In this document: piece after piece, positions 1,711-63,070 of the stretch
Layout: each line of letters begins with the position of its first letter
How positions within the stretch are numbered: position 1 is the first letter of the stretch
Virus record (IMG/VR): IMGVR_UViG_3300023049_000005
Span: 186,001 to 250,000 of that record
Reading direction: 5' to 3' (one strand)
Length of the DNA stretch: 64,000 nt
Position numbers and translations under genes: made by a program
Notes under the pieces: generated by a model
Seen by the model: only the letters and a program-made list of their open reading frames with translations
Databases searched by the model: none
What the model was told of the DNA's origin: nothing

Positions 1711-2458
1711 AGTAGATTATTATAAAACACTAGGTTTAAGTTTTGACTTCACACCTAAAGACCTCAAAAAGAGTTATAGAGATTTATCTAAGTTATACCA
1801 TCCTGATAAGAATTCGGGAGAAGAGGCTTCAGGTAAGTTCAAAATAATAAACGAAGGATATAAGATGTTCTCTAATGAAGAATTAAGAGAACAATATGAT
1901 AATGAAAGTAAGTTCGGAAGAAGTTATGATCCTACATTAGAACTATTGAATTTCGAATTTTCTAATTCAAATGTAGCATCCACTAACGTAGTAGATAAGA
2001 TGAATGGGTTCAAGAAAACCGAAATGCTTCATATCATTTTAGAACTAGACGAATTCAAGCCTAATTTAACATATAAAAGAAATGTAATATGTTCTAATTG
2101 TGATGGAACAGGAAATGAGGACGTTAGAGGACTGAACTTAAATTCCTCATATAATGGAGAAAATATTAAACCTTTATTCGCTCATGATGAAGAAATCCCT
2201 TGTGATATATGTGAAAAAACGGGAAGTTATAATGGTATGGAATGTCCAGGTTGTAAAGGGAACGGATATATATCCTTAGGACTATCTAAGTGTAATAATT
2301 GTAACGGTAAGGGCGTAGTTGAAAAAATCAAAAGAGTAAAAGTAAAGGAAGATGATTTCGAGGGCGGTAAATTAAAGATGATTTATTTAGGCAATCAGTC
2401 AAAGTACAACGGTAAGATGGGAAACCTTTATGTAATAATTAAAGAAGACGAAGATTAA
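1697..2458 (+). CDS. dnaJ: DnaJ-like co-chaperone (J domain + CxxCxGxG zinc finger, shortened C-terminus)
   Basis: DYYKTLG...YHPDKN J domain; CSNCDGTG, CDICEKTG, CPGCKGNG, CNNCNGKG repeats; GNLYV C-terminal motif. Confidence 0.85.
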   Translation: MMKLEVDYYKTLGLSFDFTPKDLKKSYRDLSKLYHPDKNSGEEASGKFKIINEGYKMFSNEELREQYDNESKFGRSYDPTLELLNFEFSNSNVASTNVVDKMNGFKKTEMLHIILELDEFKPNLTYKRNVICSNCDGTGNEDVRGLNLNSSYNGENIKPLFAHDEEIPCDICEKTGSYNGMECPGCKGNGYISLGLSKCNNCNGKGVVEKIKRVKVKEDDFEGGKLKMIYLGNQSKYNGKMGNLYVIIKEDED

Positions 2459-34467: not shown

Positions 34468-35538
34468 ATGCTTAAAAATAATGAAAGAAAAATAAGAGTA
34501 GAATATATTTGGTTAGACGGTGGTACTCCACAGAAAATACGATCTAAGACCAAGGTTATGACAACTACTACTGACGATCTAATGACTATTGAATTATCTG
34601 ATTGGAATTATGACGGATCTTCAACGAAACAAGCTGTAACCAATAATTCAGAAGTTGTAATTAAACCAAAAACAAGATTTAAAGATCCCTTCGGTGGTGA
34701 CCTTTTAGTAATGTGTGATACATACAGCCCTGATGGTACACCACTTGGTGACAACAAGCGATACGAATTAGAGAAAATAATTGATATGGATCAAGAAACA
34801 TGGTATGGTTTCGAACAAGAATATACTATGATGAACCCAACTTCGGGTAAGCCATTAGGTTTCCCTAATACAGAAGGATATTTCCCTGAGCCACAAGGAA
34901 ATTATTACTGCGGAGTAGGCTATAATCATGTTAAAAATGGTAGAGAGATAGCTATGGAACATTTAGATAAATGTATAGAAGCGGGTATTAATATCAGTGG
35001 TGTCAATGCAGAAGTCATGCTAGGACAATGGGAGTATCAGGTCGGTCCTGTCCCTGCATTAGAGGGGGCAGATTCGATGTGGATGTCTAGATATATCCTT
35101 TATAGAATCGGAGAGAAATATAGTGTAGAAATGAATATCGAACCAAAACCCGTTAAAGGCGATAATTGGAACGGCTCAGGTATGCATGTTAATTTCTCTA
35201 CAGGTGCTATGAGAGATAAGAAAAACATCGAAAGTGGTGAAAGTATCAAAATTATAGAAAGAGCCTGTGAGAAACTTTCTACGAAACATTCAGAACACAT
35301 ATCAGTGTACGGTGAGGGTAATGAAGAAAGACTTACAGGAATCAACGAGACTTCTTCTTATAAAGACTTTTCTTGGGCATATGGTAGTAGAGAAGTATCT
35401 ATTAGAATACCAACTGCTGTTAAAGAAAGAAAGGTGGGATATTTAGAAGATAGAAGACCATCATCTAACGGTGATCCTTATTTAATTTGTAGAAAGTTAA
35501 TCCAAACTATCTGCAGCGAGAAAGAAGCGTATGCATAA
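34468..35538 (+). CDS. glnII: Glutamine synthetase type II
   Basis: EYIWLDG, RSKT, WNYDGSST.QA, GFEQEY, QGNYYCGVG, NAEVMLGQWEYQVG, WNGSGMHVNFS, RLTG..ET, SIRIP, YLEDRRPSSN.DPY; AAAC-N17-TATAAT at 34426-34452. Confidence 0.95.
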   Translation: MLKNNERKIRVEYIWLDGGTPQKIRSKTKVMTTTTDDLMTIELSDWNYDGSSTKQAVTNNSEVVIKPKTRFKDPFGGDLLVMCDTYSPDGTPLGDNKRYELEKIIDMDQETWYGFEQEYTMMNPTSGKPLGFPNTEGYFPEPQGNYYCGVGYNHVKNGREIAMEHLDKCIEAGINISGVNAEVMLGQWEYQVGPVPALEGADSMWMSRYILYRIGEKYSVEMNIEPKPVKGDNWNGSGMHVNFSTGAMRDKKNIESGESIKIIERACEKLSTKHSEHISVYGEGNEERLTGINETSSYKDFSWAYGSREVSIRIPTAVKERKVGYLEDRRPSSNGDPYLICRKLIQTICSEKEAYA

Positions 35539-47844: not shown

Positions 47845-50800
47845 ATGAGTAACAGTATTCAAGAAACATATAGTTCAGCACTAGTAAACTATTCAGAGCC
47901 TAGAACAATTAACGGTGTACATTACACGAGGTTTTACACAGAATTCAACACTGAATTGTCTGTAGGTGATTTCGTGTATATCTTAAATGGTAATTATGAT
48001 AATACTGATTTACTTAACATCAACGAATATCAACAAGGAACAACGGGCTATGAAGTATTAGAGATCGATAGAAATTCGATAACTTTAGATATCTTATATA
48101 GAGATGAAGATCCGTGGAACGAAGACCCATTCGCTGATTATACTAAAGTATATTTAGTTGATAATATCCAAAAATTTAATTATGAAAATATAGATAACTC
48201 GTTTGGTTTCGAAGGTCAAAGTGGGGATAAATACAGTATATTTAATAACAATGTTTTCTTATCTCAAATAGAGGATATGGAATATACCCAAGAAACAGGA
48301 ACTAACCAAAGATTTTTTAAGTCTTTCTTTGATCCCGAACGTACTTTAGGTATGGTCGATATGAGAGGACAATTATTTAATGATTCCACGGAATTAAAAT
48401 TCGATCTAGAAGAACTAACCGAATATAGTTTAGTTGAGCCTAACGGGGCATCAGGTAGTACATATGCTAGGTTTTCTAGTGGGCAGAATAATATAAGAGA
48501 TTTTGATATAGTAACACAAGTTGATTATAGTACAGATGAAATAATAGAGAGATTAATATCACTTAACTCATCTAATTCAGCTACTAATACAGTCAATTTA
48601 TGGACACTTAATAAAAACACATTAGATGGTATAGGTGATGTTACACTAAGAAATAGTTTAAATACAGAAGATGTGAGTGCTAATATAGTATCCCCTTTTA
48701 TTAAAAAAGACGGATTGGGGGCATTTTCGGGTAGTCTTATTGATATTAGATTACCGAAATATTCAGGTAGTACATATAATTATATAAGTTCTCAATCAGG
48801 GGGTGCTATATTAGGTAATACTTCAAGAACTTATACACTTAGAGATATAAATCAAACAGTAATAGTGGGATATGATGATCCTACTTTTGAAAACAATTAT
48901 AGAGCATTTGGTTTTTATAATTCTTCGGATCTATTGTCTGATAAATTTATATCACCTGATTCACAGGATGATAGTTGGACAATTGCTAACGGTCAGGGAT
49001 ATATAGACGGTAATACACAGTCTACTCCATATTTTGCTTTGTCGTCAGGTTTAACAGGGTCTTATAATTATACAGGCGACTTTGTTTTCCCACAACGACA
49101 AATTGGAGGATTTAGGGTATATGGAAATATAGTACCACCATACGCAGAATATAGTGGTATAGGTAGAGCAGTTCAAATAGAAACAAATACGTGGAATAAT
49201 TCAGTAGAGGATTCTACACACCATGAGTTAGTTTTTGCGGGAACAGGACTTACATCATCAGTCGATCCATTACAAGGAGGTGCTTATTTTTATTCATATG
49301 GAGGCGTTTGGCGTGATTATGATAGTATCTATAATGGTAATAAAATGTTAGGTAATGCGTTTGAGCTTTCTAAAACAACTTTTGATGAATATAAAACAGG
49401 GAGTTGGTCACAGTCTAGTTTTAACCCATTTGGTGATTTTGATGATTACCCGTTCGCAGATTTAAAAGATATTAAATTCTTAGGATACGAGAAGAAAGAT
49501 TTTGGATTAAATATCTATTATGATAGTGCAGGTACACCTGTTAATACGTTTTCGGCTCTTACTTTTGCTTTACCTACTTTCGGTGGTATTGGTGGTGGTG
49601 AAACTTTTGCTTTACCATCGGAATTCGAATCTAATGGAGTATATTATTCTAGGTACTTAGTAATTACTGAAAGTGGTACTTCTTATATAATAAATTTATT
49701 ATTTAACAGTGTTCTTTTAGCGGTAAATACTGATTTCTTAACTGATATGCAGAATGGATTACCACAAGTACATGTAGTAATACAAGAAATAGACACTGAT
49801 CTTAGCCAACCAACAGAAATCGGAGTGCAAAGGAATTTAAACGTTTTTGATTTCCCTGAATTAATAGGGGGGGATTATCCAATTGTGTCTATATACGGAA
49901 CACATTCTTATTATGATCCTATAAGCGGAACATTTTCGGGGTTTGACTTTAGTGATATTAATATAAGTACTATTGATTTTAGTGACCAAAGATGGCTAAT
50001 AGGTAGCTCTGAACTAAGCCCAAGGTTAAGTAATTCTTCTCTTTTATCAACAGATGCAAACCAAGGTGTTTATGTTTTTGATAGATCAATAAATGATACT
50101 ACTTATGAGTTTAGTATAACAACAACTACTGAATTTGATACAGGTGATACTTTACCTTCAAACAAAATATATAAAATATTAGGAGAGGTTATAAATAATA
50201 AGAGAAGAGTTTGGGTAGCTACGAACACAGGTCTATTTATGTTTGATTATGATCTAGCATATACTTTTGATTATTATTTTAGAGTAAATTTTGATGATAA
50301 TGAAATAGAACTAGATGAATCATTATATAAGAATGACAGACTTTATGTGATGGAAGAATTCACGTATGATGGAAGATTATTCGAAAAAGATAAAATATAT
50401 CGTCATTTAAAAGACGAAAAAAGATGGGTAAGGGATACTACATACGAAAGATCGTATTTAACTAAAGCTCACATGAAAGATGGTACTATATTAGAAGGTG
50501 TCTTCAATGATGGTATCTTCGGTAATAAAAACACTGTTGCAAATTGGGAAGGGGCTACTTGGAGAAATGGGATAGTTTATAATGTGGATTGGGATAGTGG
50601 TACAATGAGTTCTAAATCTGATATTATATTAAGACAAAATTATTATGCTACGTTAGATAATAGCAAAGTTAAGATAAGTACTGATTTTACTAACAATGAA
50701 GGATATGGTTATAATTTAGTTAATTTCTCTACACTTAAAACGGGTGATGTCTTAAATGGAACAATATTAAATACAACAATTGGGTTAACTGTAAGTAGTA

Positions 50801-53800
50801 GATTATTGGATGATACGTATAATGGATTATCGTTTAGTTATAACGATTTAGAAATTGTTAGATCTAAGATAGAAAATTCTACTACGAATGCGATACAACT
50901 TGGTAATTCTATGGTTAGTAGATCAGATCTAAATTCTACTTTTGTTAATGATGCTCAATTGATTAATAATAATGTATATGATAGTATAATAAATGATGCA
51001 ACAATAGAAAACCAAGGTAATATTAAGATATTAGGATACGAAAAATGGTTTAATATCAGAACTAAAACGGAACAACAGGATATATTACAAATTCATAAAT
51101 TCTTTATTAACGAAAAGGATTTTAGTAAGTTATCATATGAAGATTGGGTAGTTTTCAATAACGTGCAGTTAAGTAATAATAACCCGTCTAACATACTCGA
51201 TAGACTGTTCTATGTCTTAGGTGGAGCTGATGGATATTACCAAGATGTATATGAAGATTTAAATAGAATATTTAATAATAAGTATAGAGAGAATAATTTT
51301 AAGATATTTATTTCTAAACGATTAGAAACACAGAATAGACAAAGAACTAATATTAGATATAATGGTGTTCAGTTAGTTGTAGATACTGCAGAGAACGAAA
51401 GTCCTATGTATTCTATTGATTTAAATATAGTAACTAATGAAATACCATATAATTCTGATTCGAGTATTTATTTAAATGCTTTAGAAAATGATGGTATACT
51501 TAAAGTAAATGCTACTAATATAAGTAAAGCGGTTTTACAGAATTACCATTTTAAAAATAGTTGGATTAATGGTGGTACTTGGTTAAATGGTTCTATGATA
51601 CAACCTGATCAGTTAAATAGTTTATATAATTATGGGTCAGTTTCTTCTACCACTAATAGTGTTACAGTTGATTTATATGATAATAATTATGAGATAAAGT
51701 CTTCTGATATACTTGATAATGAAGTTGTACATATAAATAACATATGGGATAGTAATTTCTTAACGTATAGTGGTGGTGATTTTATGATCGTATCAGGAAC
51801 AACATCAAGAGTTTTAGAACCGTATGGTGATTTCGCAACAAACGCAACACTATCTGTTCCTATGAGTCAATATACTACACTTAATTTAAATAGAATTGAC
51901 GGAGTAAATAATAATTTATCAATTGTAAGTGGTGTATTTAAGAACCAAAGTTTTTCTAATTTAAGTATACAAAACGAAGAATTAGATGTAAGAAATTTAA
52001 ATTATCAGAATATTAGAAACTTAATGGTTATAAATTCTGAAATCACAAAGAGAGATAATTTAGAGATACAAGATATATTCTTAGGATATGGACATGTCTC
52101 AAATGACTTTACTAGCAAAGAAGAATTTGGTTTAGATCTTATATCATATAAACAAACATTAACAAACGTAAATGTTTTTGATGGTATAGTTACTAAGTCT
52201 GCTTTCATATCAGGTACATTCTCTGATGGTATATTTACTAATAATCGTTACAGAGATATCAATGATTTGATTCCTATTAACAATAGAACCTATGCACCAA
52301 CACAAAGTGCTGTGATATCTTCATGGCATTTCGGTAATTTCCTAAACGGGGAAGTTTCTGATTCAACTTGGTTGAATGGTACATTCTCTAATGGAATATT
52401 CTTAAATAGTGAATTCTTAGGTGGTATTTGGTCAAATGGTGAGTTTGGTGATATATCAGGTAGACCAACTCTTAACTTATTTAGAAAGGGGTTGTGGTTA
52501 AATGGTGCTTTTAATAATGGAATATTTGGCGATGATGATAAAGAAGTTGGTACGATAAATAGTATTTATACTAATAATAAGTATATTTTAGAAAGTAATA
52601 TTTATACTAAAGAAGGAACAAATATATGGGAGAAAGGTAATTTCAACAATGGTGTTTTAACTTCTATTAATAATAATGTAACAATATGGAGAGACGGTAA
52701 ATTTAACAATGGTAAAGTAAGTGGGTCTGTTATTTGGTATGATGGTATATTTAATAACGGTAAATATAGTTCTAGATACGGTAGACAAGTAGCTAACGTA
52801 GCAGGTGAAGTGGATTTATTAAGTCTTGCGGATAGTTCATTAGCAGACGGATCGAGAACATTAAACTTAAATGGTATAACAGCTTCTTTCCCCTTCTTAG
52901 ATCAATATAGTATTGCTTCTATTAGAGATATCAATGCTAATAATCCAAACCTATTTGATAACGCAGGAACGATTGTTCTTGATACTAGTGATAATCAATT
53001 AAAGTTCGGTTATGTTTCTTCTACTACAAGTAATACAGTGCTTGATCCATTTGATACTAACTTATCTTCACATGGTTTCACTGAAAAGGCTGCTGATGAT
53101 TTCTTTACGGGTACTATATCAAATTTATATATGCAGTTCAAACCATTAGATTACGAAGCAATTGGGACAAGTGTACACCCACTTAAAAATGCTAACATAT
53201 TAGGTGCTAAGATATTCGTTCAAGATACTTCAAATGAATATATTTATGATGGATCAAGTTATGTTACTCAATCTAATTTCTTATCTGCTACAATAAGTGG
53301 CACATCGTTAACATTCAGTAGTTATTATTCTTGGAGAAATGGTGTATTCAATAACGGTGAATTTGGATTAGCGGATAATCCAAATAATATAAACCCATCA
53401 TGGGAAAACGGTACTTTCAACGGTGGTGTTTTTAATGGTAAAGTTTGGAAAAATGGAACATTCGTAAAGGGTAAATTTAATGGTTCGGGTACAAATCAGT
53501 TACAAACTAGTAGTACAAATATATTTAAGGGTTATGACCCACAAGCAAGTATAGAAGAATATATCGATGATTATAGTCTATCTTTTATAGCAGCACAAAA
53601 CCAAGGACAAGGATCATATAAAGTTATTTTAGATAAATATGATTGGTATGGTGTGTGGTTAAATGGTGAGGTTTCACCAAATATTAGTGGACTTAGTGTT
53701 GTTTTATCTAATTTAGAAAGCGCAGTATCTAACGTAACACCCAATTTAAGTTTTGGGTTAGAATCCGCATTTGCTCCTTCTGCTACTAACACATCTGTTT

Positions 53801-56800
53801 CCAATGCTCTTTCTAATAATTCAGGTTTATTGACAAACACATCAGTTCTTTCTAGTCCTGTTAGAGAAAATATACTTGTTGAATATTTCAACGAAGATAA
53901 ATATAATAGAAGAATTAATAAAAGACCCATATTCGATAAAATGATATGGGTAAACGGTATATTTAATAACGCAGACGGAGAATTTAATGAAAGTGTTTGG
54001 CTTAGTGGTACTATGAAAAACGGTACATTTAGAAATTCTATGTTCAACCCATATGTACAAAGATGGGATTTCGAAACAGGTGATTTAAATAATATAGAAT
54101 TTAAATTTGACTTAGATACTGAGAACACTATATGGGAGAACGGAACATTTGATAGTGGTATATTCTTTTTCTCTGATTGGGAGAACGGAACATTCGAAAA
54201 TGGTGTAATGATGGGTGGTAACTTTAAGGCAGGTAGAGCTAATTATATGTCTGCATATTCTTCTATTTGGGAAGGTGGTAGATTTAGAAATGGTAATTGG
54301 TTCGGGTCTAACTTTACGTTTGATAATATTTACAACGATCCATCTATACCCAATCCTTTTGAGTACTTACGTAATTATTTTGCTAATGTTCAATTTGCTC
54401 CTTTCGTAACAGATATTTTAGGTAATAATAGTAAGAGATTACAGGATGATAGATTACATATATGGAATATAATAGAAGGTGATATTACTAATAGTGTTTA
54501 TAATATAACAGGTCATAGTTTTGGTACTGATAGTGGATCACAAATAATCAATAACGGAACAGTAGATGTGAATAACACATACAGCTTTACTGATATATCA
54601 ACTAGCCCCGCATCGGGTATATATAGATTGGAATTAAGTATATCACAAACACCAATTGTTTTCTCTACATATGACTATATTGTGAATTTCACATTAGTTG
54701 ACCAAAAGAGATATGATGAAGGGGTGTACGAAATTACTTTTTATACCGATGGTAATATTTGGAGTCCTATTCCAATAGTAAACAGCACGGTGTTTGAATT
54801 ATATGCTGATATATACGAAAACGGTATATTAATCGAACCTGATGTATTACTAAAACAAATCCCAATAGGTAGTTATAAGAATGTTAGGAAAACCTTTGAG
54901 GTATTAGAAAATCAAGAATATGTACTTAAAATAGAAGCCCGAATGAGTGTAGATAATGGTACTTACACGGAGAGTTATTACTTAGCAATAGAAGAAGTAG
55001 TGGCTGAGGTTGTTTACTCAAATAAAAATAATGATCTAGAAGGGTCAATAGAATTAAATTGGGAAGGTTCATACTTAAATTCTACTGCTTCGACTGCTAG
55101 TGCTTCATTAACTTATACAAATACATTAAGTTTAGAAGATACTATTCGTTATACAGGTTTAGATGTATCTACTATAAGTATACCTACTGTATATAAAGAT
55201 TATTCAAGTGCGTATTCTCAATTTGGAAACGGTACTTTCCAATCAGGTATATTTGAAAACGGAATATGGAACAACGGATATAGGGGAACAGAATACGGTC
55301 TTTATATAATAGAAGACGGTGATGTTTATCCTGGGGCGACATTAAGTTATGTTCATTTGGGTGGTTCTTCGTCTATAGTAGAAACTAATCCATTATATAG
55401 CGATGTCCCTCAAGTTAAATATAGAACAGAACCAATTGTGTATTTTAACAGAGTACAAAGAAGCTTTAAAGTAGGAAGAAGAAGATGGAGATTCGTTTTA
55501 GAAAGTGCTTTTGATATTGATGCTGCTAATAATACAGAAGAATATAATAGATTAAGAGTAAGTGATCAAGTGTCTATTTCTAATATAATAGCAATAGATA
55601 TTAATGGTAATAGAAAATTAATTAAAGATGTATTTAGAATAATTAGAATACCAAGTAGAACTAGAATAGTAGTAGAGTATCAAGAAACTTTCCCTATCGA
55701 TAGTATCCAAATAGATAGCGATAGACACTTAATTGCGGTTAGTAAAAACGTATGGTTTAATGGTGCTTTCTTAAATGGGTATTTTAAAGGTAATATGATA
55801 AACGGATTTGTTAGAGGAAATAGAAATATCACCAAGATAGAAGACTCTCAATTAATAGACGTTGACTTCCAAGGTGGGCATTTTGTGAGTAAGAAATACA
55901 CACTTAGTAGTATATTCGATACAAGAACATCCAATTCGTTAAGTTTATCTCCACAATTCACAGAGAAATATAATAGCTTATATCATAGTGGATTAATACA
56001 AAATATGACATTCGATGATGATGTTACTTTAACCAATTATGGGTTATATTCCACAGAAGGAGTAAAAATAAACGGAAATGGGATTGGTGATCCTAAGAAT
56101 GTAACTTTTGGTGCTACGGCAGTTTCGGAAGCACTTCAATATATCTATAATAGTGACATGGATCTAGTGTATGAACCTGAATATTATAGTAGTGTATTTA
56201 ACCAAAATATTATCAATACACATGCTATAAACGAATTGGAAATTGGTGAGTTCATCCCCACTAAACTATATAACATACCTGCGGGTTATATTACTTATGA
56301 TGTATTAAATAGTGTATCTAATTTTAAATATTCGACTGAGCCAAATAACATTGAGGGGGTAATAGAATATAAATTAAGTTTAGGATCTAAATATAAAATA
56401 TTTAATGATTTATTTAATGTTGATTTTTCACAAAGTCCAAATAATGATCCTGATATAGATGCACCATCTACTTTTAATATAGTGGAATCAGCAACATATG
56501 GTATATTCAGACAAGGATCTATATCTAATGGTATCAATTTTAACCAACTAGAATCACAATTTATACACGAAGACTTTATGTATATATTTGATACTAGTAG
56601 TAATGTTACAGAAAAAATAACAGGGAACAATACGTTTAAACTTAGAAATAGATATCACTTAGTAGAAGTAGATGTAGAATTTACTAATAAAACAGTACCC
56701 AATCCTTATGTTATAACTAATACCGTTACTATAGGCACTACATATAGTTATGGTACATTCTCACTACCTAAATTAAGTATAGGGCAAGCCTATAACGAAT

Positions 56801-57417
56801 ATTTTGAAAATATTAATTTAGGTGGAACAAGTGGTTATATATCATCTTATGATAATGATATGGTCGGATTTATTGATGGGACAAAATTAAGTGAGATAAA
56901 TAATTTTGGAAATATTGGTGATACTAAACGATTAACCATGAAGTCATTTATGTATAATAACTTTGGTGGGTATAGAGATTCAGTGAGAGTTATAGAAAAG
57001 GGCTTTAATGTTGATATAGGTTCAACCAGTAGCGAATATACAGTTAATTCTCCAATTTATTATAAATTTAATCATTATGAGATAGATAAAATTCCTTTTT
57101 ATGATTATAGAAGTTATATTGATCCATTAAGTGGTGAGGTAACAGATTGGAATATGTTAGCAAACCAAGATCAAACTAGAAAAATAGATGATAGGATTAA
57201 AACACCTTTCTATGCTTCTTCTGTTCCTATTAATTATCAAGACTCTAATTTTGTATTAACTGATAATATAAATTTCTTAGGTGGTTCTAATATAACAGGT
57301 AATGTGATTATTGAAGAAGTAGATACATTATCAACAGCTACTATACAAGAATTATTAGATTTACTTGCTGCTAATAAACAATTTAATTTTGGTGGTGGTG
57401 GTCCTCAATCATTATAA
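47845..57417 (+). CDS. Giant 3190-aa structural protein with G-x-[FW]-x-[ND] pentapeptide beta-helix repeats
   Basis: Blocks of W.NG.F.NG.F repeats; N/S/T/G-rich; TAATATATA at 47818-47826. Confidence 0.75.
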   Translation: MSNSIQETYSSALVNYSEPRTINGVHYTRFYTEFNTELSVGDFVYILNGNYDNTDLLNINEYQQGTTGYEVLEIDRNSITLDILYRDEDPWNEDPFADYTKVYLVDNIQKFNYENIDNSFGFEGQSGDKYSIFNNNVFLSQIEDMEYTQETGTNQRFFKSFFDPERTLGMVDMRGQLFNDSTELKFDLEELTEYSLVEPNGASGSTYARFSSGQNNIRDFDIVTQVDYSTDEIIERLISLNSSNSATNTVNLWTLNKNTLDGIGDVTLRNSLNTEDVSANIVSPFIKKDGLGAFSGSLIDIRLPKYSGSTYNYISSQSGGAILGNTSRTYTLRDINQTVIVGYDDPTFENNYRAFGFYNSSDLLSDKFISPDSQDDSWTIANGQGYIDGNTQSTPYFALSSGLTGSYNYTGDFVFPQRQIGGFRVYGNIVPPYAEYSGIGRAVQIETNTWNNSVEDSTHHELVFAGTGLTSSVDPLQGGAYFYSYGGVWRDYDSIYNGNKMLGNAFELSKTTFDEYKTGSWSQSSFNPFGDFDDYPFADLKDIKFLGYEKKDFGLNIYYDSAGTPVNTFSALTFALPTFGGIGGGETFALPSEFESNGVYYSRYLVITESGTSYIINLLFNSVLLAVNTDFLTDMQNGLPQVHVVIQEIDTDLSQPTEIGVQRNLNVFDFPELIGGDYPIVSIYGTHSYYDPISGTFSGFDFSDINISTIDFSDQRWLIGSSELSPRLSNSSLLSTDANQGVYVFDRSINDTTYEFSITTTTEFDTGDTLPSNKIYKILGEVINNKRRVWVATNTGLFMFDYDLAYTFDYYFRVNFDDNEIELDESLYKNDRLYVMEEFTYDGRLFEKDKIYRHLKDEKRWVRDTTYERSYLTKAHMKDGTILEGVFNDGIFGNKNTVANWEGATWRNGIVYNVDWDSGTMSSKSDIILRQNYYATLDNSKVKISTDFTNNEGYGYNLVNFSTLKTGDVLNGTILNTTIGLTVSSRLLDDTYNGLSFSYNDLEIVRSKIENSTTNAIQLGNSMVSRSDLNSTFVNDAQLINNNVYDSIINDATIENQGNIKILGYEKWFNIRTKTEQQDILQIHKFFINEKDFSKLSYEDWVVFNNVQLSNNNPSNILDRLFYVLGGADGYYQDVYEDLNRIFNNKYRENNFKIFISKRLETQNRQRTNIRYNGVQLVVDTAENESPMYSIDLNIVTNEIPYNSDSSIYLNALENDGILKVNATNISKAVLQNYHFKNSWINGGTWLNGSMIQPDQLNSLYNYGSVSSTTNSVTVDLYDNNYEIKSSDILDNEVVHINNIWDSNFLTYSGGDFMIVSGTTSRVLEPYGDFATNATLSVPMSQYTTLNLNRIDGVNNNLSIVSGVFKNQSFSNLSIQNEELDVRNLNYQNIRNLMVINSEITKRDNLEIQDIFLGYGHVSNDFTSKEEFGLDLISYKQTLTNVNVFDGIVTKSAFISGTFSDGIFTNNRYRDINDLIPINNRTYAPTQSAVISSWHFGNFLNGEVSDSTWLNGTFSNGIFLNSEFLGGIWSNGEFGDISGRPTLNLFRKGLWLNGAFNNGIFGDDDKEVGTINSIYTNNKYILESNIYTKEGTNIWEKGNFNNGVLTSINNNVTIWRDGKFNNGKVSGSVIWYDGIFNNGKYSSRYGRQVANVAGEVDLLSLADSSLADGSRTLNLNGITASFPFLDQYSIASIRDINANNPNLFDNAGTIVLDTSDNQLKFGYVSSTTSNTVLDPFDTNLSSHGFTEKAADDFFTGTISNLYMQFKPLDYEAIGTSVHPLKNANILGAKIFVQDTSNEYIYDGSSYVTQSNFLSATISGTSLTFSSYYSWRNGVFNNGEFGLADNPNNINPSWENGTFNGGVFNGKVWKNGTFVKGKFNGSGTNQLQTSSTNIFKGYDPQASIEEYIDDYSLSFIAAQNQGQGSYKVILDKYDWYGVWLNGEVSPNISGLSVVLSNLESAVSNVTPNLSFGLESAFAPSATNTSVSNALSNNSGLLTNTSVLSSPVRENILVEYFNEDKYNRRINKRPIFDKMIWVNGIFNNADGEFNESVWLSGTMKNGTFRNSMFNPYVQRWDFETGDLNNIEFKFDLDTENTIWENGTFDSGIFFFSDWENGTFENGVMMGGNFKAGRANYMSAYSSIWEGGRFRNGNWFGSNFTFDNIYNDPSIPNPFEYLRNYFANVQFAPFVTDILGNNSKRLQDDRLHIWNIIEGDITNSVYNITGHSFGTDSGSQIINNGTVDVNNTYSFTDISTSPASGIYRLELSISQTPIVFSTYDYIVNFTLVDQKRYDEGVYEITFYTDGNIWSPIPIVNSTVFELYADIYENGILIEPDVLLKQIPIGSYKNVRKTFEVLENQEYVLKIEARMSVDNGTYTESYYLAIEEVVAEVVYSNKNNDLEGSIELNWEGSYLNSTASTASASLTYTNTLSLEDTIRYTGLDVSTISIPTVYKDYSSAYSQFGNGTFQSGIFENGIWNNGYRGTEYGLYIIEDGDVYPGATLSYVHLGGSSSIVETNPLYSDVPQVKYRTEPIVYFNRVQRSFKVGRRRWRFVLESAFDIDAANNTEEYNRLRVSDQVSISNIIAIDINGNRKLIKDVFRIIRIPSRTRIVVEYQETFPIDSIQIDSDRHLIAVSKNVWFNGAFLNGYFKGNMINGFVRGNRNITKIEDSQLIDVDFQGGHFVSKKYTLSSIFDTRTSNSLSLSPQFTEKYNSLYHSGLIQNMTFDDDVTLTNYGLYSTEGVKINGNGIGDPKNVTFGATAVSEALQYIYNSDMDLVYEPEYYSSVFNQNIINTHAINELEIGEFIPTKLYNIPAGYITYDVLNSVSNFKYSTEPNNIEGVIEYKLSLGSKYKIFNDLFNVDFSQSPNNDPDIDAPSTFNIVESATYGIFRQGSISNGINFNQLESQFIHEDFMYIFDTSSNVTEKITGNNTFKLRNRYHLVEVDVEFTNKTVPNPYVITNTVTIGTTYSYGTFSLPKLSIGQAYNEYFENINLGGTSGYISSYDNDMVGFIDGTKLSEINNFGNIGDTKRLTMKSFMYNNFGGYRDSVRVIEKGFNVDIGSTSSEYTVNSPIYYKFNHYEIDKIPFYDYRSYIDPLSGEVTDWNMLANQDQTRKIDDRIKTPFYASSVPINYQDSNFVLTDNINFLGGSNITGNVIIEEVDTLSTATIQELLDLLAANKQFNFGGGGPQSL

Positions 57418-57455
57418 AAAAAAAGGGGGGATAGTTAAAAACATATCCCCCCTTT
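57418..57455. terminator. Bidirectional intrinsic terminator
   Basis: A run, GGGGGGATA-GTTAAAAACA-TATCCCCCC, TTT, between convergent genes. Confidence 0.8.
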
Positions 57456-57475
57456 CAGACAAACTAAAAACTAAT

Positions 57476-58210
57476 CTATTGTTTGATAAACTGTTTCGTC
57501 AATGTCTTTCCATCTTTGTTCAACATTAATATATAATTACCTCTAGTTAAAGAAGTAACATCGATTCTGTTGTTATTTAAATTACCTTGTTTAACCATAC
57601 TACCATTGATATTAAATACACTAAAGGTAGCGTTAGAAACATCATTACTAACATTCAAATAGTCAGTAGTTGGATTAGGATAAATTGTAAAAGAAAGTGA
57701 TTCTTTCTCAAAGCTATTATCATTAATACCTGTAGTAATACTACTTACAAAAATAGTATCTACTGTGTGTATAATATCAACATCAACTTGATATCTACCT
57801 GCAAAAACAGTATTACTAATATTAAAATCTAATACATCACCTGATTTTAATATTAAACTATCTTTAACTACATTAAATAGAGACATATTATTACCACTAG
57901 TGATGGTCGTAGAATTTGTATCAATAGTGAAATTATAACCGCCTCTTATATGGGTTAAGGAAAAACTCACTTTATATGAGTTATAAGTAGTAGGTATAGT
58001 TTCACTATACAGTGTAACTGCAGCCCTCATGTTCTGAACTCCACTATTATAAGCATATAGTGTATCAACTTTAGAGCTATCTTGTGTATAGTTATTGATG
58101 TTTGTATCATTAACTACCATTTGATTTGATACATCGAAAAACACAGTATCCTGAGCGTTCAATGTCGTTGCAAATAATGCAACTATTAAGATTGAGATTA
58201 ACTTTTTCAT
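57476..58210 (-). CDS. Secreted protein with T9SS type A C-terminal sorting domain
   Basis: Sec signal MKKLISILIVALFATTLNA/Q; C-terminal IYPNPTTDYLNV...FNINGSMVKQG...IDVTSL.RGNYIL......TKQFIKQ. Confidence 0.88.
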   Translation of the reverse strand: MKKLISILIVALFATTLNAQDTVFFDVSNQMVVNDTNINNYTQDSSKVDTLYAYNSGVQNMRAAVTLYSETIPTTYNSYKVSFSLTHIRGGYNFTIDTNSTTITSGNNMSLFNVVKDSLILKSGDVLDFNISNTVFAGRYQVDVDIIHTVDTIFVSSITTGINDNSFEKESLSFTIYPNPTTDYLNVSNDVSNATFSVFNINGSMVKQGNLNNNRIDVTSLTRGNYILMLNKDGKTLTKQFIKQ

Positions 58211-58245: not shown

Positions 58246-58253
58246 CAAATATA
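58246..58253 (-). promoter_or_regulatory. Bacteroidota-type promoter TTG-N19-TATATTTG
   Basis: Upstream of T9SS cargo gene; second TATATTTG at 58329-58336(-). Confidence 0.6.
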
Positions 58254-58370
58254 CGAATACTTTTTAAATAAACAAGCTTTTCTGTAAAAAAAATTATTCT
58301 TATATTAAATCCTTGTTTTAGTTCAGCACAAATATAAGAAAACTTTTATATACAATCAACTATAATTAAT

Positions 58371-59315: not shown

Positions 59316-59759
59316 ATGAAACGTACTATAAATAATTTCGAAAATTGGGTAACAATAAATGAAGAAGGCGGTGCTGCAGGTGGTGGCGCAGGCGCAGGAG
59401 CAGCAGGTGGTGGAACAGGTGCAGGAGTAGCATCAGGTTCAGGATCAGGTGATGCTTCGGCAGGAACGACTCCTGTATCAACAGGTGGGGTAGCTTACTT
59501 CAACCAAGGATCTGTTGATGGAATGGGTGCTGTTAAAAATTCAACAGTTTCTCCCGTACCAGGCTCACCAAAAGAGAGTGAAGCAGGATCAGGTGATGTA
59601 TCATTACCCGCATTTACTTTTACTAAAGACACAGGTATAACAGGAAATAAGTTCCACAAAATGGGTAAAGTAAAAGTTGATATGGGTACAATCAAAAAGA
59701 TAAAAGATAAAGTAGGTCTAGGTAAAGTTAAATCTTTCGAAGACTTCTTAAATAAATAA
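59316..59759 (+). CDS. Gly-rich low-complexity protein with CTS-like motifs at both ends
   Basis: MKRTINNFENWVTINEE ... KVKSFEDFLNK; TAATATATA at 59300-59308. Confidence 0.7.
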   Translation: MKRTINNFENWVTINEEGGAAGGGAGAGAAGGGTGAGVASGSGSGDASAGTTPVSTGGVAYFNQGSVDGMGAVKNSTVSPVPGSPKESEAGSGDVSLPAFTFTKDTGITGNKFHKMGKVKVDMGTIKKIKDKVGLGKVKSFEDFLNK

Positions 59760-59769
59760 TTAAAGTAAT

Positions 59770-60534
59770 ATGAGATTTGTAAAAAAATATGATAAATTCT
59801 TAGAAAGTTATTCAGAAGATATCGATGAAGTAATGGATGATAAAGATAACGAATACGTTCTAATAGAAAATGGTGAAGTAAACTCAGCGTTTGAAACAGT
59901 AGAAACAGCATTCGAATACTTAGCTGATATGTTAGAAGACAAAAAGCAATTAGATATTGATCAAAAAGAAGAATTTTTAGAAATCACTAAAGAAGAATTG
60001 GGTAAACTAGATTCTGAAATCATATTACAAGAAGAGATAGATTTCGTATTAAACTTCATATTAGATCGTTTTAATATAGTAGAACCTTTTGAAATCAAAG
60101 CTAGAATAGAAATAGAAGATACTCCAATAGATGATACTATCGATACAGAACTAGAAGAACTATTAGGAGAAAGTAAAGAATATTTAATATTCTCATCTGA
60201 TGGGAAAGAATTAGATGGTTTTGATAGTAAAGAAGAAGCAGATGATTTTAAAGAAGAATATGATAAAGTCTATAACAGTTGTAAAGTAGTTCATAAAGAT
60301 GATATGATTAAAGAATCTGTTTTATCCGAGAGAGGTTGTGATTGTGAAGATTGTGAATGCCATAAAACAGGATTGTGTTCATGTGGATCAGATTGTAGTT
60401 GTACTAAATGTAAGTTAATTAAAGTACATATGCGTCATTGTAACCAAGGAGATTTTGAAGATTCTTGTAAGTATGGTGATCCTAATTGCCCTATGTTAAA
60501 CCAAGAGCAAGAAGAAGATACTTTTTCAAAGTAA
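59770..60534 (+). CDS. Acidic CTS-bearing protein with metallothionein-like Cys cluster
   Basis: MRFVKKYDKFLES; CDCEDCECHKTGLCSCGSDCSCTKC...HC......CKYGDPNCP. Confidence 0.7.
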   Translation: MRFVKKYDKFLESYSEDIDEVMDDKDNEYVLIENGEVNSAFETVETAFEYLADMLEDKKQLDIDQKEEFLEITKEELGKLDSEIILQEEIDFVLNFILDRFNIVEPFEIKARIEIEDTPIDDTIDTELEELLGESKEYLIFSSDGKELDGFDSKEEADDFKEEYDKVYNSCKVVHKDDMIKESVLSERGCDCEDCECHKTGLCSCGSDCSCTKCKLIKVHMRHCNQGDFEDSCKYGDPNCPMLNQEQEEDTFSK

Positions 60535-61464
60535 TTCGTAACTATTATTCTTACCGTCAATTAAATAAGAGACACATTCTTTATTCTCTGCATATTTATA
60601 CCCCGCTTCCCACCATTTTTCGGATAACTCTTTATCAAATATTAAAGCATTATTAGTAAGTCTTTTATTTAAGTAATGAAAGTTTATTTGTATTTTCTTA
60701 GTAGCATGATGTGCTAAATACCCTATGTCAATTTGATGATCTTTAATTTTATTCATCATTAGTAATAGTAATTTTATCTGATAATGTAATATATTTCTAA
60801 TATGCTCAATAGCCCAATCTGTTTTTTCTTTATCTAGTACGATTACATCTATTATATCATTCTTATCCAAGATAGCTTGTTTAATTGGAACTTGTGTTGA
60901 AACACCACCATCAGTATAATGACATCCGTTTATTTCAGGTAAACTCATAAAAGGAGGCGCACAAGTAGATGCCCACATCCAATCACAAAATTCTTCATAG
61001 GTATAATCCTTTAAATCCTTTTCTTCAGGCATACCTGTTGACATATTAGTAACTACGATCAATATTTTTTTACCACTGTTGATCAGATCAATATAATTAT
61101 CTTTTGTGAAAAATTTAGGAATTGTGTGTGTCCTTAACTTTGTAGTATCCCCCAAAGCAATCTGTTTATTGATAATAATATTCTTAAATATATTCCAATA
61201 GTTTACACCATAGATATAAATACCATTACTTTGTTTTTCGATTTTAAACGGATTAATTGAGAATATATCATCCATTGTAATAGATGAAAACGCTGTCTTT
61301 AATTTGTTGTAATTATTAGTAGCCGCAAAAGGAATTAAAAGAGATCCTATAGATGAACCATATAAATTATCATAAGTTATTCCGTTTCTAATATAATATT
61401 CTATAATCCCACCTGCGTAAGCTCCCTTAGACCCACCGACACTTATAACTAGACCTCTCTTCAT
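60526..61464 (-). CDS. Patatin-like phospholipase
   Basis: LVISVGGSKGAY oxyanion loop, GSSIG nucleophile elbow, WASTCAP, YTDGG. Confidence 0.88.
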   Translation of the reverse strand: MKRGLVISVGGSKGAYAGGIIEYYIRNGITYDNLYGSSIGSLLIPFAATNNYNKLKTAFSSITMDDIFSINPFKIEKQSNGIYIYGVNYWNIFKNIIINKQIALGDTTKLRTHTIPKFFTKDNYIDLINSGKKILIVVTNMSTGMPEEKDLKDYTYEEFCDWMWASTCAPPFMSLPEINGCHYTDGGVSTQVPIKQAILDKNDIIDVIVLDKEKTDWAIEHIRNILHYQIKLLLLMMNKIKDHQIDIGYLAHHATKKIQINFHYLNKRLTNNALIFDKELSEKWWEAGYKYAENKECVSYLIDGKNNSYELL

Positions 61465-62289: not shown

Positions 62290-62739
62290 TTAGTTGTGTT
62301 TAATATCTCTTTCTGCTTGTCGATCAATGTCTTTACTTTTAATAGAATCTTTCTTATCATATAATTTCTTACCCTTACCAACCCCAATTTCTAATTTAGC
62401 CCAATTGTTAACGATCAGTAATTTAATAGGAATTAATGAATATCCTTTTTCTTCTATTTTTTTAGTTATCTTCTTAATCTCTTGTTTAGTAAGTAATAGT
62501 TTCCTCTCTCTTGTTTCATCGTGTTTTTCACCAAACTTATACTCTTTGATATACATATTCTTAACATATATTTCCCCGTCATTAATTATACAGAAAGACT
62601 CTTTGATAGAGCATGATCCTTCCCTAACACTTTTTATTTCAGTACCTAATATTCTAAGACCTGCAACAAAAGTTTCCCCTATCTCATAATTGAAATAAGC
62701 TTTCTTATTGTTTACTATTGTTTCTATTTTCTTTGACAT
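62290..62739 (-). CDS. smpB: SsrA-binding protein SmpB
   Basis: NKKAYFNYEI, AGL.I.GTEIKSVR, RERKLLL.KQEI, LIPIK, AKLEIGVGKGKKLYDKK; start reassigned to ATG 62739. Confidence 0.93.
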   Translation of the reverse strand: MSKKIETIVNNKKAYFNYEIGETFVAGLRILGTEIKSVREGSCSIKESFCIINDGEIYVKNMYIKEYKFGEKHDETRERKLLLTKQEIKKITKKIEEKGYSLIPIKLLIVNNWAKLEIGVGKGKKLYDKKDSIKSKDIDRQAERDIKHN

Positions 62740-62749
62740 ATTAATATAG

Positions 62750-63070
62750 TTAAATGCTATCAATAAGTTTATCTCTGAGTTCAGCTTTAATTAAGTTTAC
62801 TATTTTTTCTTTATTTCTTCTATATAAGTAAACAGTAATAGTTTCTAATTTGAAATCATTCAGATCTAATTTTTCTAAATCTAATATGATATAACGCAAA
62901 AATCCATCAGGTGATACTCTCCTTTCATGATAAGCATTACCCTTTAATAAAGATCTATCTTGATATAATAATTTCTTCATTAGTTTTTCATTACCAATAG
63001 AATTACCTTCCTTGTCTTTTAATATACTAGGATTATTTAGTAAATCTCTTATTACTATAAAGTCGCTCAT
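62750..63070 (-). CDS. Hypothetical protein with C-terminal RD tag; paralog of next gene
   Basis: FIVIRDLLNNPSILK...; ends ELRDKLIDSI. Confidence 0.75.
   Translation of the reverse strand: MSDFIVIRDLLNNPSILKDKEGNSIGNEKLMKKLLYQDRSLLKGNAYHERRVSPDGFLRYIILDLEKLDLNDFKLETITVYLYRRNKEKIVNLIKAELRDKLIDSI

What the first reader, a model, noticed from the sequence alone, without database searches (positions are those of the whole stretch)
57476..58210. Phage-encoded cargo for the host type IX secretion system
A Sec signal plus an intact T9SS type A CTD (YPNP...G.Y......T.KFIK) flank a ~150-aa beta-rich domain of unknown function. The gene has its own host-type early promoter and terminator. Inference: the phage uses the host T9SS to display or secrete a protein, for example for superinfection exclusion, receptor masking, or competitive jamming of T9SS/gliding.
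Basis: partly seen in the sequence, partly recalled or inferred. Interest (0 to 1): 0.68.

Follow-up and report, generated by a model that had tools for sequence, protein, structure and literature searches.

The report
Jumbo-phage gene for T9SS-exported protein
A 270-kb phage of an uncultured Flavobacteriales-type bacterium carries a small stand-alone gene whose product has all the sequence and fold signals for export by the host's type IX secretion system; the same idea has been proposed for other phages and never tested, and what the exported beta-sandwich does is unknown.

Summary
ORF 57476-58210 (-) encodes 244 aa in three parts. There is a Sec signal peptide that exposes Gln20, as the Bacteroidetes Q-rule predicts. 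A 140-aa jelly-roll domain matches no Pfam, NCBIfam, PHROG or PADLOC family. The C-terminal domain scores 47.6 bits on TIGR04183 (cut-off 23). Its model superposes on the Flavobacterium NucA CTD bound to the T9SS translocon (Z 12.2, rmsd 1.4 A).

The window lies in a 270,756-bp IMG/VR virus record, and this is the record's only CTD gene. A T9SS-CTD gene sits in the same slot, convergent with a giant 3190-aa gene, in five further related phage contigs. All six share a TATATTTG promoter box, while the proteins fall to 33% identity or carry a different cargo domain.

The cargo family is rare: 15 clusters among 1.84 billion representatives. It also occurs in bacteria, including Flavobacteriales-like contigs. 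Twice it lies beside AbiH with an HTH gene and a zinc-ribbon gene. Phage and bacterial copies interleave in the tree. dN/dS is 0.18, so the gene is maintained.

T9SS export is well supported but inferred. Superinfection exclusion or receptor masking remains a guess, and "early" is unsupported. Phage-encoded T9SS cargo was described before (Bellas 2020; de Jonge 2019), so this is a new member of a known kind.

The parts
57476..58210 (-). Whole ORF (244 aa plus TAA stop) for the signal peptide + jelly roll + T9SS CTD protein (P0001)
   Evidence: Homologues at 98%, 80%, 59% and 53% identity. dN/dS 0.18 against the L002 orthologue.
58154..58210 (-). Sec (SPase I) signal peptide, aa 1-19. Predicted cleavage is A19|Q20, which would expose an N-terminal Gln (Bacteroidetes Q-rule).
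   Evidence: Sequence inspection and a crude hydrophobicity scan. The Gln at +1 is conserved in the family alignments. Q-rule: PMC5837995. No dedicated signal-peptide predictor was available.
57734..58153 (-). Cargo domain, aa 20-159: an all-beta jelly-roll sandwich of an uncharacterised family. Conserved motifs are DTL, P..Y..Y, DTN and HTVDT.F.
   Evidence: Model pLDDT 90.2, pTM 0.75. Only generic fold matches: C5 CUB Z 10.6, phage KP1 baseplate cup Z 9.6, lambda gpJ, KHP40 cement protein, C1q, CBM6/35/36. No Pfam, NCBIfam, PHROG, PADLOC or PDB sequence match. 15 representative clusters in 1.84 billion proteins.
57695..57733 (-). Flexible linker, aa 160-172, where CTD cleavage by the host sortase PorU would be expected
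   Evidence: pLDDT below 50 for residues 160-170. The cleavage site itself is inferred, not shown.
57479..57694 (-). T9SS type A C-terminal sorting domain, aa 173-244
   Evidence: TIGR04183 47.6 bits (cut-off 23) and PF18962 51.6 bits (cut-off 27). Z 12.2, rmsd 1.4 A over 71 of 75 residues to the NucA CTD in the F. johnsoniae T9SS substrate complex 8glk_D. Also matches FspA, mirolase and RgpB CTDs. It is the only CTD hit in the 270-kb record.
58246..58275 (-). Bacteroidota sigma-A-type promoter candidate: TTG, 19 nt, TATATTTG. It ends 35 nt before the ATG.
   Evidence: The -7 box is conserved upstream of the syntenic gene in L011, L002, L008, L014 and L016, and is absent upstream of the bacterial homologues. 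Not significant on its own. A second TATATTTG lies at 58329-58336.
57416..57456 (.). G/C-rich hairpin with a U-run between the two convergent genes. It is the intrinsic terminator for the T9SS gene. Read in the other direction it follows the giant gene but has a poorer T-run.
   Evidence: -24.6 kcal/mol, z -4.7. The same hairpin is in L002. A different hairpin sits at the same place in L008 and L014.
47845..57417 (+). Context rather than part of the gene: a giant 3190-aa ORF convergent with the T9SS gene. This neighbour is constant in every related phage contig found.
   Evidence: It has 86%, 59%, 56% and 56% identical homologues in L002, L014, L008 and L016. No Pfam or PHROG match.

Best explanation
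This is a phage-borne, independently transcribed ('moron'-like) gene for a small exported protein.

Proposed route, step by step:
1. It is transcribed from a host-type TTG-N19-TATATTTG promoter and stops at its own hairpin.
2. The precursor crosses the inner membrane through Sec. Signal peptidase I cuts at A19|Q20, leaving a Gln that the host cyclises.
3. The C-terminal type A CTD is recognised by the T9SS translocon (SprA/PorV) of the Flavobacteriales-type host.
4. The 140-aa jelly-roll cargo is carried across the outer membrane. The CTD is removed in the flexible linker, and the cargo is either released or anchored on the cell surface.

The cargo has a binding-type fold, not an enzyme fold. 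It belongs to a rare family shared and exchanged between these jumbo phages and their hosts.

My preferred role is remodelling of the infected cell's surface: occupying or masking a surface structure so that further phages adsorb less (superinfection exclusion, or protection of progeny from debris).

Shown here: the gene structure, the signals, the folds, the phage context, the conserved slot and purifying selection. Inferred: the export itself (about 0.75) and the surface-masking role (about 0.3).
For: Export signals:
- CTD above the curated cut-offs.
- CTD model superposes on solved CTDs caught in the Flavobacterium T9SS translocon (Z 12.2, rmsd 1.4 A).
- Signal peptide with a conserved Q at +1.

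Phage identity:
- 270,756-bp IMG/VR virus record, CheckV completeness 89%.
- PolB, baseplate hub and head-tail adaptor genes.

Conserved slot:
- A CTD gene sits convergent with the giant gene in L002, L011, L008, L014 and L016 as well as the window.
- The -7 promoter box is conserved, and hairpins lie downstream in window, L002, L008 and L014, not in L016.

Selection:
- dN/dS is 0.18 against L002. The CTD (0.14) is more constrained than the cargo (0.20). dN is among the highest in the gene block.

Host and family:
- Bacterial relatives at 53% and 49% identity lie on contigs that also carry other CTD proteins.
- One of these contigs is Flavobacteriales/Vicingaceae-like.
- In the family tree, phage and bacterial copies interleave in two clades, each supported 95/99.

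Function hints:
- Fold matches are binding or oligomerising jelly rolls only.
- Two bacterial members sit next to AbiH.
- Flavobacterial phage susceptibility depends on gliding genes (PMC9804748).
Against: - There is no expression or secretion data.
- The host is unknown, so possession of a T9SS is inferred.
- CTDs can be species-specific (PMC11285876), so compatibility with the real host is assumed.
- The promoter motif is not statistically above chance on its own.
- The cargo fold is generic, with a flat list from Z 10.6 down to 7.6. It gives no ligand or function.
- The family is absent from PADLOC.
- The AbiH association rests on two contigs.
- The cluster of differences between near-identical strains is significant per nucleotide (p = 3e-4) but not when adjacent changes are counted as one event (p = 0.14).
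Confidence: 0.6

Rival explanations
1. Host-benefit accessory gene. The exported jelly roll is a lectin-like or adhesin module. It would bind a polysaccharide or a surface and alter attachment, nutrient capture or aggregation of the infected cell. It would have no role in phage-phage or phage-host conflict.
For: Foldseek lists CBM6, CBM35, CBM36 and a porphyran-binding CBM among the matches. The conserved Asp/Thr/Asn motifs (DTN, VDT) resemble the metal or sugar sites of such modules; this is inference only. The same phage carries other metabolic accessory genes: a glutamate synthase domain, a glutamine synthetase-like gene, SmpB and a patatin. Some bacterial members lie in ordinary chromosomal contexts.
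Against: The CBM matches are weak (TM 0.3-0.44, high rmsd) and no better than the matches to viral and complement jelly rolls. No CBM Pfam model matches. The fast divergence and cargo replacement at a fixed phage slot fit conflict better than a metabolic role.
Confidence: 0.2
2. The product works with the phage particle rather than on the host surface. It could be a secreted partner, decoy or decoration for the neighbouring giant protein or the tail, released with or before lysis.
For: It is adjacent to the giant gene in all six phage contigs. The cargo fold resembles phage receptor-binding and baseplate or cement jelly rolls: KP1 baseplate cup Z 9.6, lambda gpJ, KHP40 cement, and Uroviricota clusters in the Atlas. 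The few differences from the near-identical strain L011 fall in this gene and in the 3' end of the giant gene.
Against: The giant protein has no signal peptide, so the two proteins are made in different compartments. Bacterial family members exist without any giant gene. The complex prediction gave no answer, which is not evidence either way. The giant C-terminus is well conserved (57-63%), unlike a hypervariable receptor-binding tip.
Confidence: 0.08
3. Passenger gene. It is a recently captured host gene with no function for the phage, or the CTD-like Ig domain and hydrophobic N-terminus are not used for secretion.
For: The family is of the host type, and phage and bacterial copies interleave in the tree. 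Only one CTD gene occurs in 270 kb.
Against: The reading frame is intact, with signal peptide, Q+1 and CTD, in every phage relative, down to those with 56% giant-protein identity. dN/dS is 0.18. A phage-specific promoter box is conserved, and it is absent upstream of the bacterial copies.
Confidence: 0.07

Closest known systems
Phage-encoded T9SS cargo genes of 'Cryophage' (Bellas et al. 2020, Nat Commun, PMC7468147)
   Same: These are genes in a phage genome that end in a T9SS type A sorting domain and are more variable than the rest of the genome. The authors proposed that they hijack the host T9SS, possibly for inter-strain competition or superinfection effects.
   Different: Their cargoes are recognisable domains (endoglucanase, GH39, PA14). 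Here the cargo is an unannotated jelly-roll family. Here there is one gene per genome, in a fixed slot beside a giant gene of a ~270-kb jumbo phage, with a conserved promoter box. Neither case has been tested experimentally.
T9SS sorting-domain proteins on crAss-like phage contigs (de Jonge et al. 2019, PMC6949934)
   Same: T9SS sorting-domain ORFs were noted in genomes of phages of Bacteroidetes.
   Different: They are in gut crAss-like phages and are associated with BACON repeats near head genes. No signal-peptide, fold or synteny analysis was given, and the cargo is unrelated.
Type A CTD cargo of Flavobacterium johnsoniae (NucA, FspA) and P. gingivalis/T. forsythia (RgpB, mirolase)
   Same: The same C-terminal Ig-like sandwich (Z 12.2, 11.0, 10.3 and 8.2; 22-28% identity), the same position at the very C-terminus, and an N-terminal Sec signal.
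   Different: Those are chromosomal bacterial enzymes or adhesins with shown secretion. This one is phage-borne, has a non-enzymatic cargo, and its secretion is not shown.
Phage 'morons' and exported superinfection-exclusion proteins (for example T5 Llp, phi80/N15 Cor; from general knowledge, not tested here)
   Same: A stand-alone promoter-ORF-terminator unit in a phage, encoding a small exported envelope protein. A role in blocking further adsorption is the proposed analogy.
   Different: Those are lipoproteins or outer-membrane proteins of Enterobacteria exported by Sec/Lol, with known receptor targets. There is no sequence or fold relation. Here the route would be the T9SS and the target is unknown.

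Membership tests
T9SS type A CTD cargo (TIGR04183 / PF18962) | C-terminal domain matches the curated HMM above its cut-off | tested here: met
   TIGR04183 47.6 bits (cut-off 23), aa 176-244, profile positions 1-72 of 72. PF18962 51.6 bits (cut-off 27). Confirmed on the DNA.
T9SS type A CTD cargo (TIGR04183 / PF18962) | Ig-like beta-sandwich fold like solved CTDs, located at the extreme C-terminus | tested here: met
   Predicted model, aa 173-244: Z 12.2, rmsd 1.4 A, 71 of 75 residues to 8glk_D (NucA CTD in the translocon). Also 8glj_D, 8qb1_A and 5ag9_B. This rests on a predicted, not a solved, structure.
T9SS type A CTD cargo (TIGR04183 / PF18962) | N-terminal Sec signal peptide, needed to reach the periplasm first | tested here: met
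   MKK, then a 14-residue hydrophobic core, then LNA|Q. Passes a crude hydrophobicity filter. Q+1 is conserved across the family. No SignalP-type tool was available.
T9SS type A CTD cargo (TIGR04183 / PF18962) | Conserved Gly in the beta3-beta4 loop region and Lys in the last strand (motifs shown to matter in P. gingivalis, PMC11285876) | tested here: inconclusive
   G203 and G209 are nearly invariant. K239 and K243 are invariant among the close homologues. Their equivalence to the P. gingivalis motif positions was not checked on coordinates.
T9SS type A CTD cargo (TIGR04183 / PF18962) | The producing cell has a T9SS, and secretion depends on it | not testable with these tools
   The host is unknown. 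Indirect support: the nearest bacterial homologues lie on Flavobacteriales-like contigs that carry other CTD proteins.
Phage-encoded T9SS cargo (as in Bellas 2020) | The gene lies within a phage genome, not in flanking host DNA | tested here: met
   IMG/VR virus record of 270,756 bp. Phage genes lie on both sides. The same neighbours occur in L002 at 80-96% identity.
Phage-encoded T9SS cargo (as in Bellas 2020) | More variable than the surrounding phage genes | tested here: met
   80% identity against 86-96% for five of six neighbours in L002; one neighbour, the 128-aa gene, is also at 80%. 33% against 56% for the giant gene in L008. A different cargo in L016. The strain-level hot spot is suggestive only.
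T9SS-dependent surface endonuclease, AS87_RS02955 family (NF052644) | Whole-protein score above the equivalog cut-off (260 bits) | tested here: not met
   35.5 bits. The cargo domain alone gives no NCBIfam hit, and relatives match only through the CTD.
C1q/TNF-like or CBM-type jelly-roll binding domains | A specific sequence or fold match standing above unrelated jelly rolls | tested here: inconclusive
   The match list is flat (Z 10.6-7.6, TM 0.55 or less). It mixes CUB, C1q, CBM, phage receptor-binding and capsid proteins. No Pfam match.
Target gene of a diversity-generating retroelement | A template repeat of the variable region elsewhere in the genome | tested here: not met
   No repeat of any part of the ORF longer than 21 nt in the 270-kb record.
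Known anti-phage defence proteins (PADLOC-DB) | Match to a defence-system model | tested here: not met
   No hit for P0001, P0008, P0016 or the zinc-ribbon partner proteins.

The most novel reading that the evidence does not exclude
The slot beside the giant gene is an exchangeable 'surface cassette'. These jumbo phages and their Flavobacteriales hosts trade it. Its T9SS-exported jelly roll would be a cell-surface anti-adsorption factor. In bacteria it would work as part of an AbiH-linked island, together with an HTH regulator and a triple zinc-ribbon protein. Phages would have co-opted it for superinfection exclusion. That would make it the first T9SS-delivered phage-exclusion protein.
Probability: 0.15. 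Interest if true: 0.75.

Novelty: new member of a known kind. Interest (0 to 1): 0.45.

Why it matters
Phage use of the Bacteroidota-specific T9SS has been proposed from sequence twice and never tested. In flavobacteria, susceptibility to phages is tied to gliding motility genes (PMC9804748). This gene is a compact test case of 244 aa, with clear signals and a confident model. It has orthologues in a fixed slot of a whole group of jumbo phages, and bacterial relatives in defence-island-like settings. Showing T9SS-dependent export and an effect on adsorption would establish a new route by which phages rewrite the surface of marine and aquatic Bacteroidota. It would also give a function to an unannotated protein family.

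Tried and rejected
- Endonuclease lead. The weak full-length NF052644 'T9SS DNase' hit (35.5 bits against 260) comes from the signal peptide and CTD only. The cargo alone has no hit. Rejected.
- DGR-type hypermutation as the cause of the clustered strain differences. There is no template repeat. Rejected.
- Binding of the cargo to the C-terminal 400 aa of the giant protein. Complex prediction gave no answer (ipSAE 0.00, controls not run). This is not evidence either way.
- More family members in reference genomes and IMG/VR. The known-phage collection gave only one CTD-only hit, in the 634-kb uncultured phage LR745206.1, and no DNA match.
- Promoter statistics. The full motif is not enriched, and TAnnTTTG is no more enriched upstream of ORFs than its reverse complement. 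Only the cross-phage conservation supports the promoter.
- Hits of the cargo to two giant proteins, P0020 and P0021. These are a ~30-residue motif shared with cadherin-like repeats. P0020 is unrelated to the window's giant protein. Rejected as uninformative.
- Sequence-profile searches of the cargo against PDB and Pfam gave nothing significant. PLM-feature search of the ESM Atlas gave no usable hit.
- Strain-level hot spot. p = 3e-4 per nucleotide, but p = 0.14 if adjacent changes count as single events. Kept only as a hint.
Full report
THE OBSERVATION

The ORF lies exactly at 57476-58210 on the minus strand and encodes 244 aa. It has three parts.

(i) Signal peptide, residues 1-19. There is an MKK n-region, a 14-residue hydrophobic core, and the sequence LNA followed by Gln20. 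A crude hydrophobicity filter over the whole genome keeps this ORF among only 11 candidates. The Gln directly after the hydrophobic segment is conserved in nearly all relatives. The Bacteroidetes Q-rule predicts exactly this for signal peptidase I substrates (PMC5837995). The same feature has been noted in phages of Porphyromonas (PMC10367356).

(ii) Cargo domain, residues 20-159. It folds as an all-beta jelly roll. The pLDDT is above 90 in most of the domain in the full-length model and 90.2, with pTM 0.75, when folded alone.

(iii) Linker and CTD. A low-confidence linker spans 160-172. Residues 173-244 then match TIGR04183 at 47.6 bits (cut-off 23) and PF18962 at 51.6 bits (cut-off 27), over the full profile and up to the C-terminus. 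The modelled CTD superposes on the NucA CTD bound in the Flavobacterium johnsoniae T9SS translocon (8glk_D: Z 12.2, rmsd 1.4 A, 71 of 75 residues, 28% identity). It also superposes on the FspA, mirolase and RgpB CTDs.

TRANSCRIPTION SIGNALS

Downstream, on the gene's strand, a 13-bp G/C-rich hairpin followed by nine U's lies at about 57416-57456. Its free energy is -24.6 kcal/mol, z = -4.7, and none of 200 shuffles folds as well. The simple scanner missed it.

Upstream, TTG-N19-TATATTTG lies at 58246-58275 and ends 35 nt before the ATG. By my own recollection this is the form of Bacteroidota/Flavobacterium sigma-A promoters. Statistically it proves nothing on its own. There are three matches in the window against 1.6 expected. 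Genome-wide, TAnnTTTG is no more enriched upstream of ORFs than its reverse complement.

What does support it is conservation. The same box, preceded by TTCG or TTAG, lies 35-85 nt upstream of the annotated start of the syntenic gene in L011, L002, L008, L014 and L016. In L014 an in-frame ATG 36 nt further upstream is the likelier start. The proteins themselves fall to 33% identity or carry a different cargo. No such box precedes the bacterial homologues. Hairpins also follow the gene in L002 (the same one) and in L008 and L014 (a different sequence). The unit of promoter, ORF and terminator is therefore real and conserved. Nothing says it is 'early'.

CONTEXT

The window is bases 186001-250000 of a 270,756-bp IMG/VR virus record, with CheckV completeness 89% and 29.8% G+C. 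The window holds:
- a family B DNA polymerase;
- a gp5/VgrG-like baseplate hub;
- a head-tail adaptor-like gene.

The T9SS gene is convergent with a 3190-aa ORF (47845-57417) that matches no Pfam or PHROG family. It is the only CTD-bearing ORF in the whole record.

RELATIVES OF THE GENE

Two large searches define a small family.
- The word-index search found five full-length relatives at 98-53% identity.
- An exhaustive HMMER search with the cargo domain alone found 15 clusters at E <= 0.001 among 1.84 billion representatives.
- Thirteen of these 15 are real members. They are either 190-270 aa (signal peptide, one cargo domain, CTD) or about 376-394 aa with the cargo domain duplicated.
- The other two are giant proteins that share only a ~30-residue motif.
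- None comes from a named isolate.
- The cargo matches no Pfam, NCBIfam, PHROG or PADLOC model and no PDB sequence.

WHERE THE RELATIVES SIT

Phage contigs:
- L002 is a 124-kb contig. Its neighbours are 80-96% identical and its giant gene 86% identical.
- L011 is 99.5% identical in DNA.
- L008 and L014 have giant genes 56% and 59% identical.
- In all four, the family member is convergent with the giant gene.
- L016 is a 152-kb IMG/VR contig found through the giant protein's C-terminus (56% identity). A convergent 312-aa gene with a signal peptide and CTD (PF18962, 41 bits) lies in the same slot. Its cargo does not match the family profile.
- L013 looks phage-like. It has SSB, two tail-fibre genes with PTL_trimer and Peptidase_S74 domains, and a further CTD protein.

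Bacterial contigs:
- L003/L004 carry ordinary metabolic genes. A tandem paralogue and another CTD protein lie nearby. A housekeeping nucleoside phosphorylase on the contig is 64-67% identical to those of Flavobacteriales and Vicingaceae MAGs.
- L007 and L017 are chromosomal.
- The P0009 contig has ribosomal protein L31 and a YefM/YoeB pair.
- L006 and L015 share a cassette: an XRE-type HTH gene, a ~120-aa protein with three CxxC...C...H.W repeats, the T9SS jelly roll, and AbiH next door. L006 also has Gad2, SocA/Panacea and IS1595 genes.
- The zinc-ribbon partner also precedes the gene in L013. It has no homologue in the phage genome.

EVOLUTION

A maximum-likelihood tree splits the family into two clades, each supported 95/99.
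- The window's group (P0001-P0004) sits with bacterial P0005, P0008 and P0009.
- The syntenic genes of phages L008 and L014 sit in the other clade, with bacterial P0016 and P0018 and with L013.

The window's copy is thus closer to bacterial copies (53% and 49%) than to the copy in the same slot of related phages (33%). Gene flow between phage and host, or replacement at a fixed slot, has happened more than once. The direction cannot be told without a root.

Against L002 the gene has dN/dS of 0.18: cargo 0.20 and CTD 0.14. Its dN (0.114) is among the highest in the block. The neighbours range from 0.02 to 0.119, and the giant gene is at 0.081. It is maintained by selection but evolves fast.

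Against the near-identical L011, 9 of the 19 differences over 4,030 nt fall in this ORF. All are in the cargo or linker, with about 7.5 non-synonymous changes to 1.5 synonymous. Seven more fall in the 3' end of the giant gene. Only two fall in the remaining 1.9 kb. Per nucleotide this gives p = 3e-4. The changes form three tight clusters, though, and counted as events the excess is not significant (p = 0.14). No template repeat exists, so a DGR does not explain it.

WHAT THE CARGO IS

Structure searches with the domain-only model give a flat list of jelly-roll sandwiches:
- complement C5 CUB (Z 10.6);
- phage KP1 baseplate cup (Z 9.6);
- Ena3A, lambda gpJ and YomS (Z 9.0);
- KHP40 cement protein (Z 8.9; Foldseek TM 0.54);
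- C1q heads (Z about 8);
- CBM6, CBM35 and CBM36 in Foldseek.

In the ESM Atlas the nearest clusters are mostly Uroviricota hypothetical proteins and GpJ C-terminal receptor-binding domains, with TM 0.51-0.64. This identifies a common binding or oligomerising architecture and no enzyme fold. It does not identify a ligand.

The weak full-length NF052644 'T9SS DNase' hit comes from the signal peptide and CTD only.

MECHANISM

The best-supported reading is Sec export, cleavage before Gln20, recognition of the CTD by the host T9SS, and delivery of a 140-aa binding-type domain to the cell surface or the medium. The gene is expressed as an autonomous unit of the phage.

The export route rests on strong sequence and fold evidence and on knowledge of T9SS cargo. 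It is still an inference, which I put at about 0.75.

The purpose is open. I favour surface remodelling that lowers further phage adsorption, at about 0.3, for these reasons:
- the fold is non-enzymatic;
- divergence is fast and the cargo is replaced at a fixed slot;
- the family is exchanged with hosts;
- two bacterial members sit beside AbiH;
- flavobacterial phage susceptibility depends on gliding genes (PMC9804748).

The rivals are:
- a lectin or adhesin-type accessory gene that helps the host (0.2);
- a secreted partner of the virion or of the giant protein (0.08; the complex prediction gave no answer);
- a functionless passenger gene (0.07; contradicted by conservation and dN/dS).

COMPARISON WITH WHAT IS KNOWN

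Membership in the type A CTD class is met on every feature that can be tested in silico.

The concept of phage-encoded T9SS cargo is already published.
- Bellas et al. 2020 described three variable CTD genes in 'Cryophage'. They proposed hijack of the host T9SS, with possible roles in competition or superinfection (PMC7468147).
- de Jonge et al. 2019 noted T9SS sorting-domain ORFs on crAss-like contigs (PMC6949934).

New here are:
- the unannotated cargo family;
- the fixed, promoter-bearing slot beside the giant gene across a group of jumbo phages;
- the interleaving with bacterial copies;
- the HTH / zinc-ribbon / AbiH neighbourhood in bacteria.

I therefore rate it a new member of a known kind, of moderate interest.

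LIMITS

- No read or RNA data could be obtained.
- The host is unknown.
- All structures are predictions.
- Bacterial contexts are few and come from metagenomic contigs.

Noticed in passing
L016:5233-6919 (IMG/VR UViG_3300035698_019747, a 152-kb viral contig related through the giant protein): A CRISPR-like array of about 26 units (period 66 nt: a 36-nt repeat starting GTTGTGATTCCC plus ~30-nt spacers). It lies between the giant gene and the T9SS-CTD gene of a related phage. No cas genes were looked for and no spacer targets were searched.
   Followed up: partly
window 47845-57417 (+): A 3190-aa ORF with many W.NG.F.NG-type repeats and no Pfam or PHROG match. It is conserved at 56-86% identity in every related phage contig, and a T9SS-CTD gene always follows it convergently. 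Its function is unknown.
   Followed up: partly
window 62293-62763 (-); genome C1:105540-105913 (outside the window): The phage encodes a full SmpB (172.8 bits). ARAGORN calls a tmRNA with an unusual tag elsewhere in the same genome, plus 19 tRNAs in two clusters. The related contig L002 also has SmpB, a CCA/polyA polymerase-type gene and CinA. The tmRNA call was not checked with Rfam.
   Followed up: no
L006:9351-11928 and L015:885-3404; also L013:2117-3653: A conserved bacterial neighbourhood: an XRE-type HTH gene, a ~120-aa protein with three CxxC...C...H.W zinc-ribbon-like repeats, the T9SS jelly-roll gene, and AbiH adjacent in two of three cases. Neither the jelly roll nor the zinc-ribbon protein is in PADLOC.
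   Followed up: partly
window 7570-9069 (+) and 34468-35538 (+): Nitrogen-metabolism-like accessory genes in the phage: a glutamate synthase domain protein (PF01645, 269.9 bits) and a glutamine synthetase catalytic-domain-like protein (PF00120, 63.6 bits).
   Followed up: no
window 60526-61464 (-): A patatin-like phospholipase (PF01734, 69.9 bits), 96% identical in the related phage L002 and the most conserved gene of the block (dN/dS 0.03).
   Followed up: no
L013:7724-11653: On a phage-like contig, two tail-fibre genes (PTL_trimer + Peptidase_S74) are followed directly by a 623-aa protein that ends in a T9SS CTD (50.6 bits). It lies a few kb from a family member with a duplicated cargo domain.
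   Followed up: no
LR745206.1:298396-298647 (uncultured phage, 634,780 bp): This is the only hit of the protein in the deposited-phage collection. It is a CTD-only match (aa 154-243, 40% identity, E 9e-6) in an unannotated 'megaphage' record. It suggests CTD-bearing genes in other very large phages.
   Followed up: no
window 1697-2458 (+); 59316-59759 (+); 59770-60534 (+): A DnaJ-domain protein. Just beyond the T9SS gene lie a 147-aa protein with a long Gly/Ala/Ser-rich low-complexity stretch and a very acidic 254-aa protein with a Cys-rich C-terminus. Both are conserved in L002.
   Followed up: no
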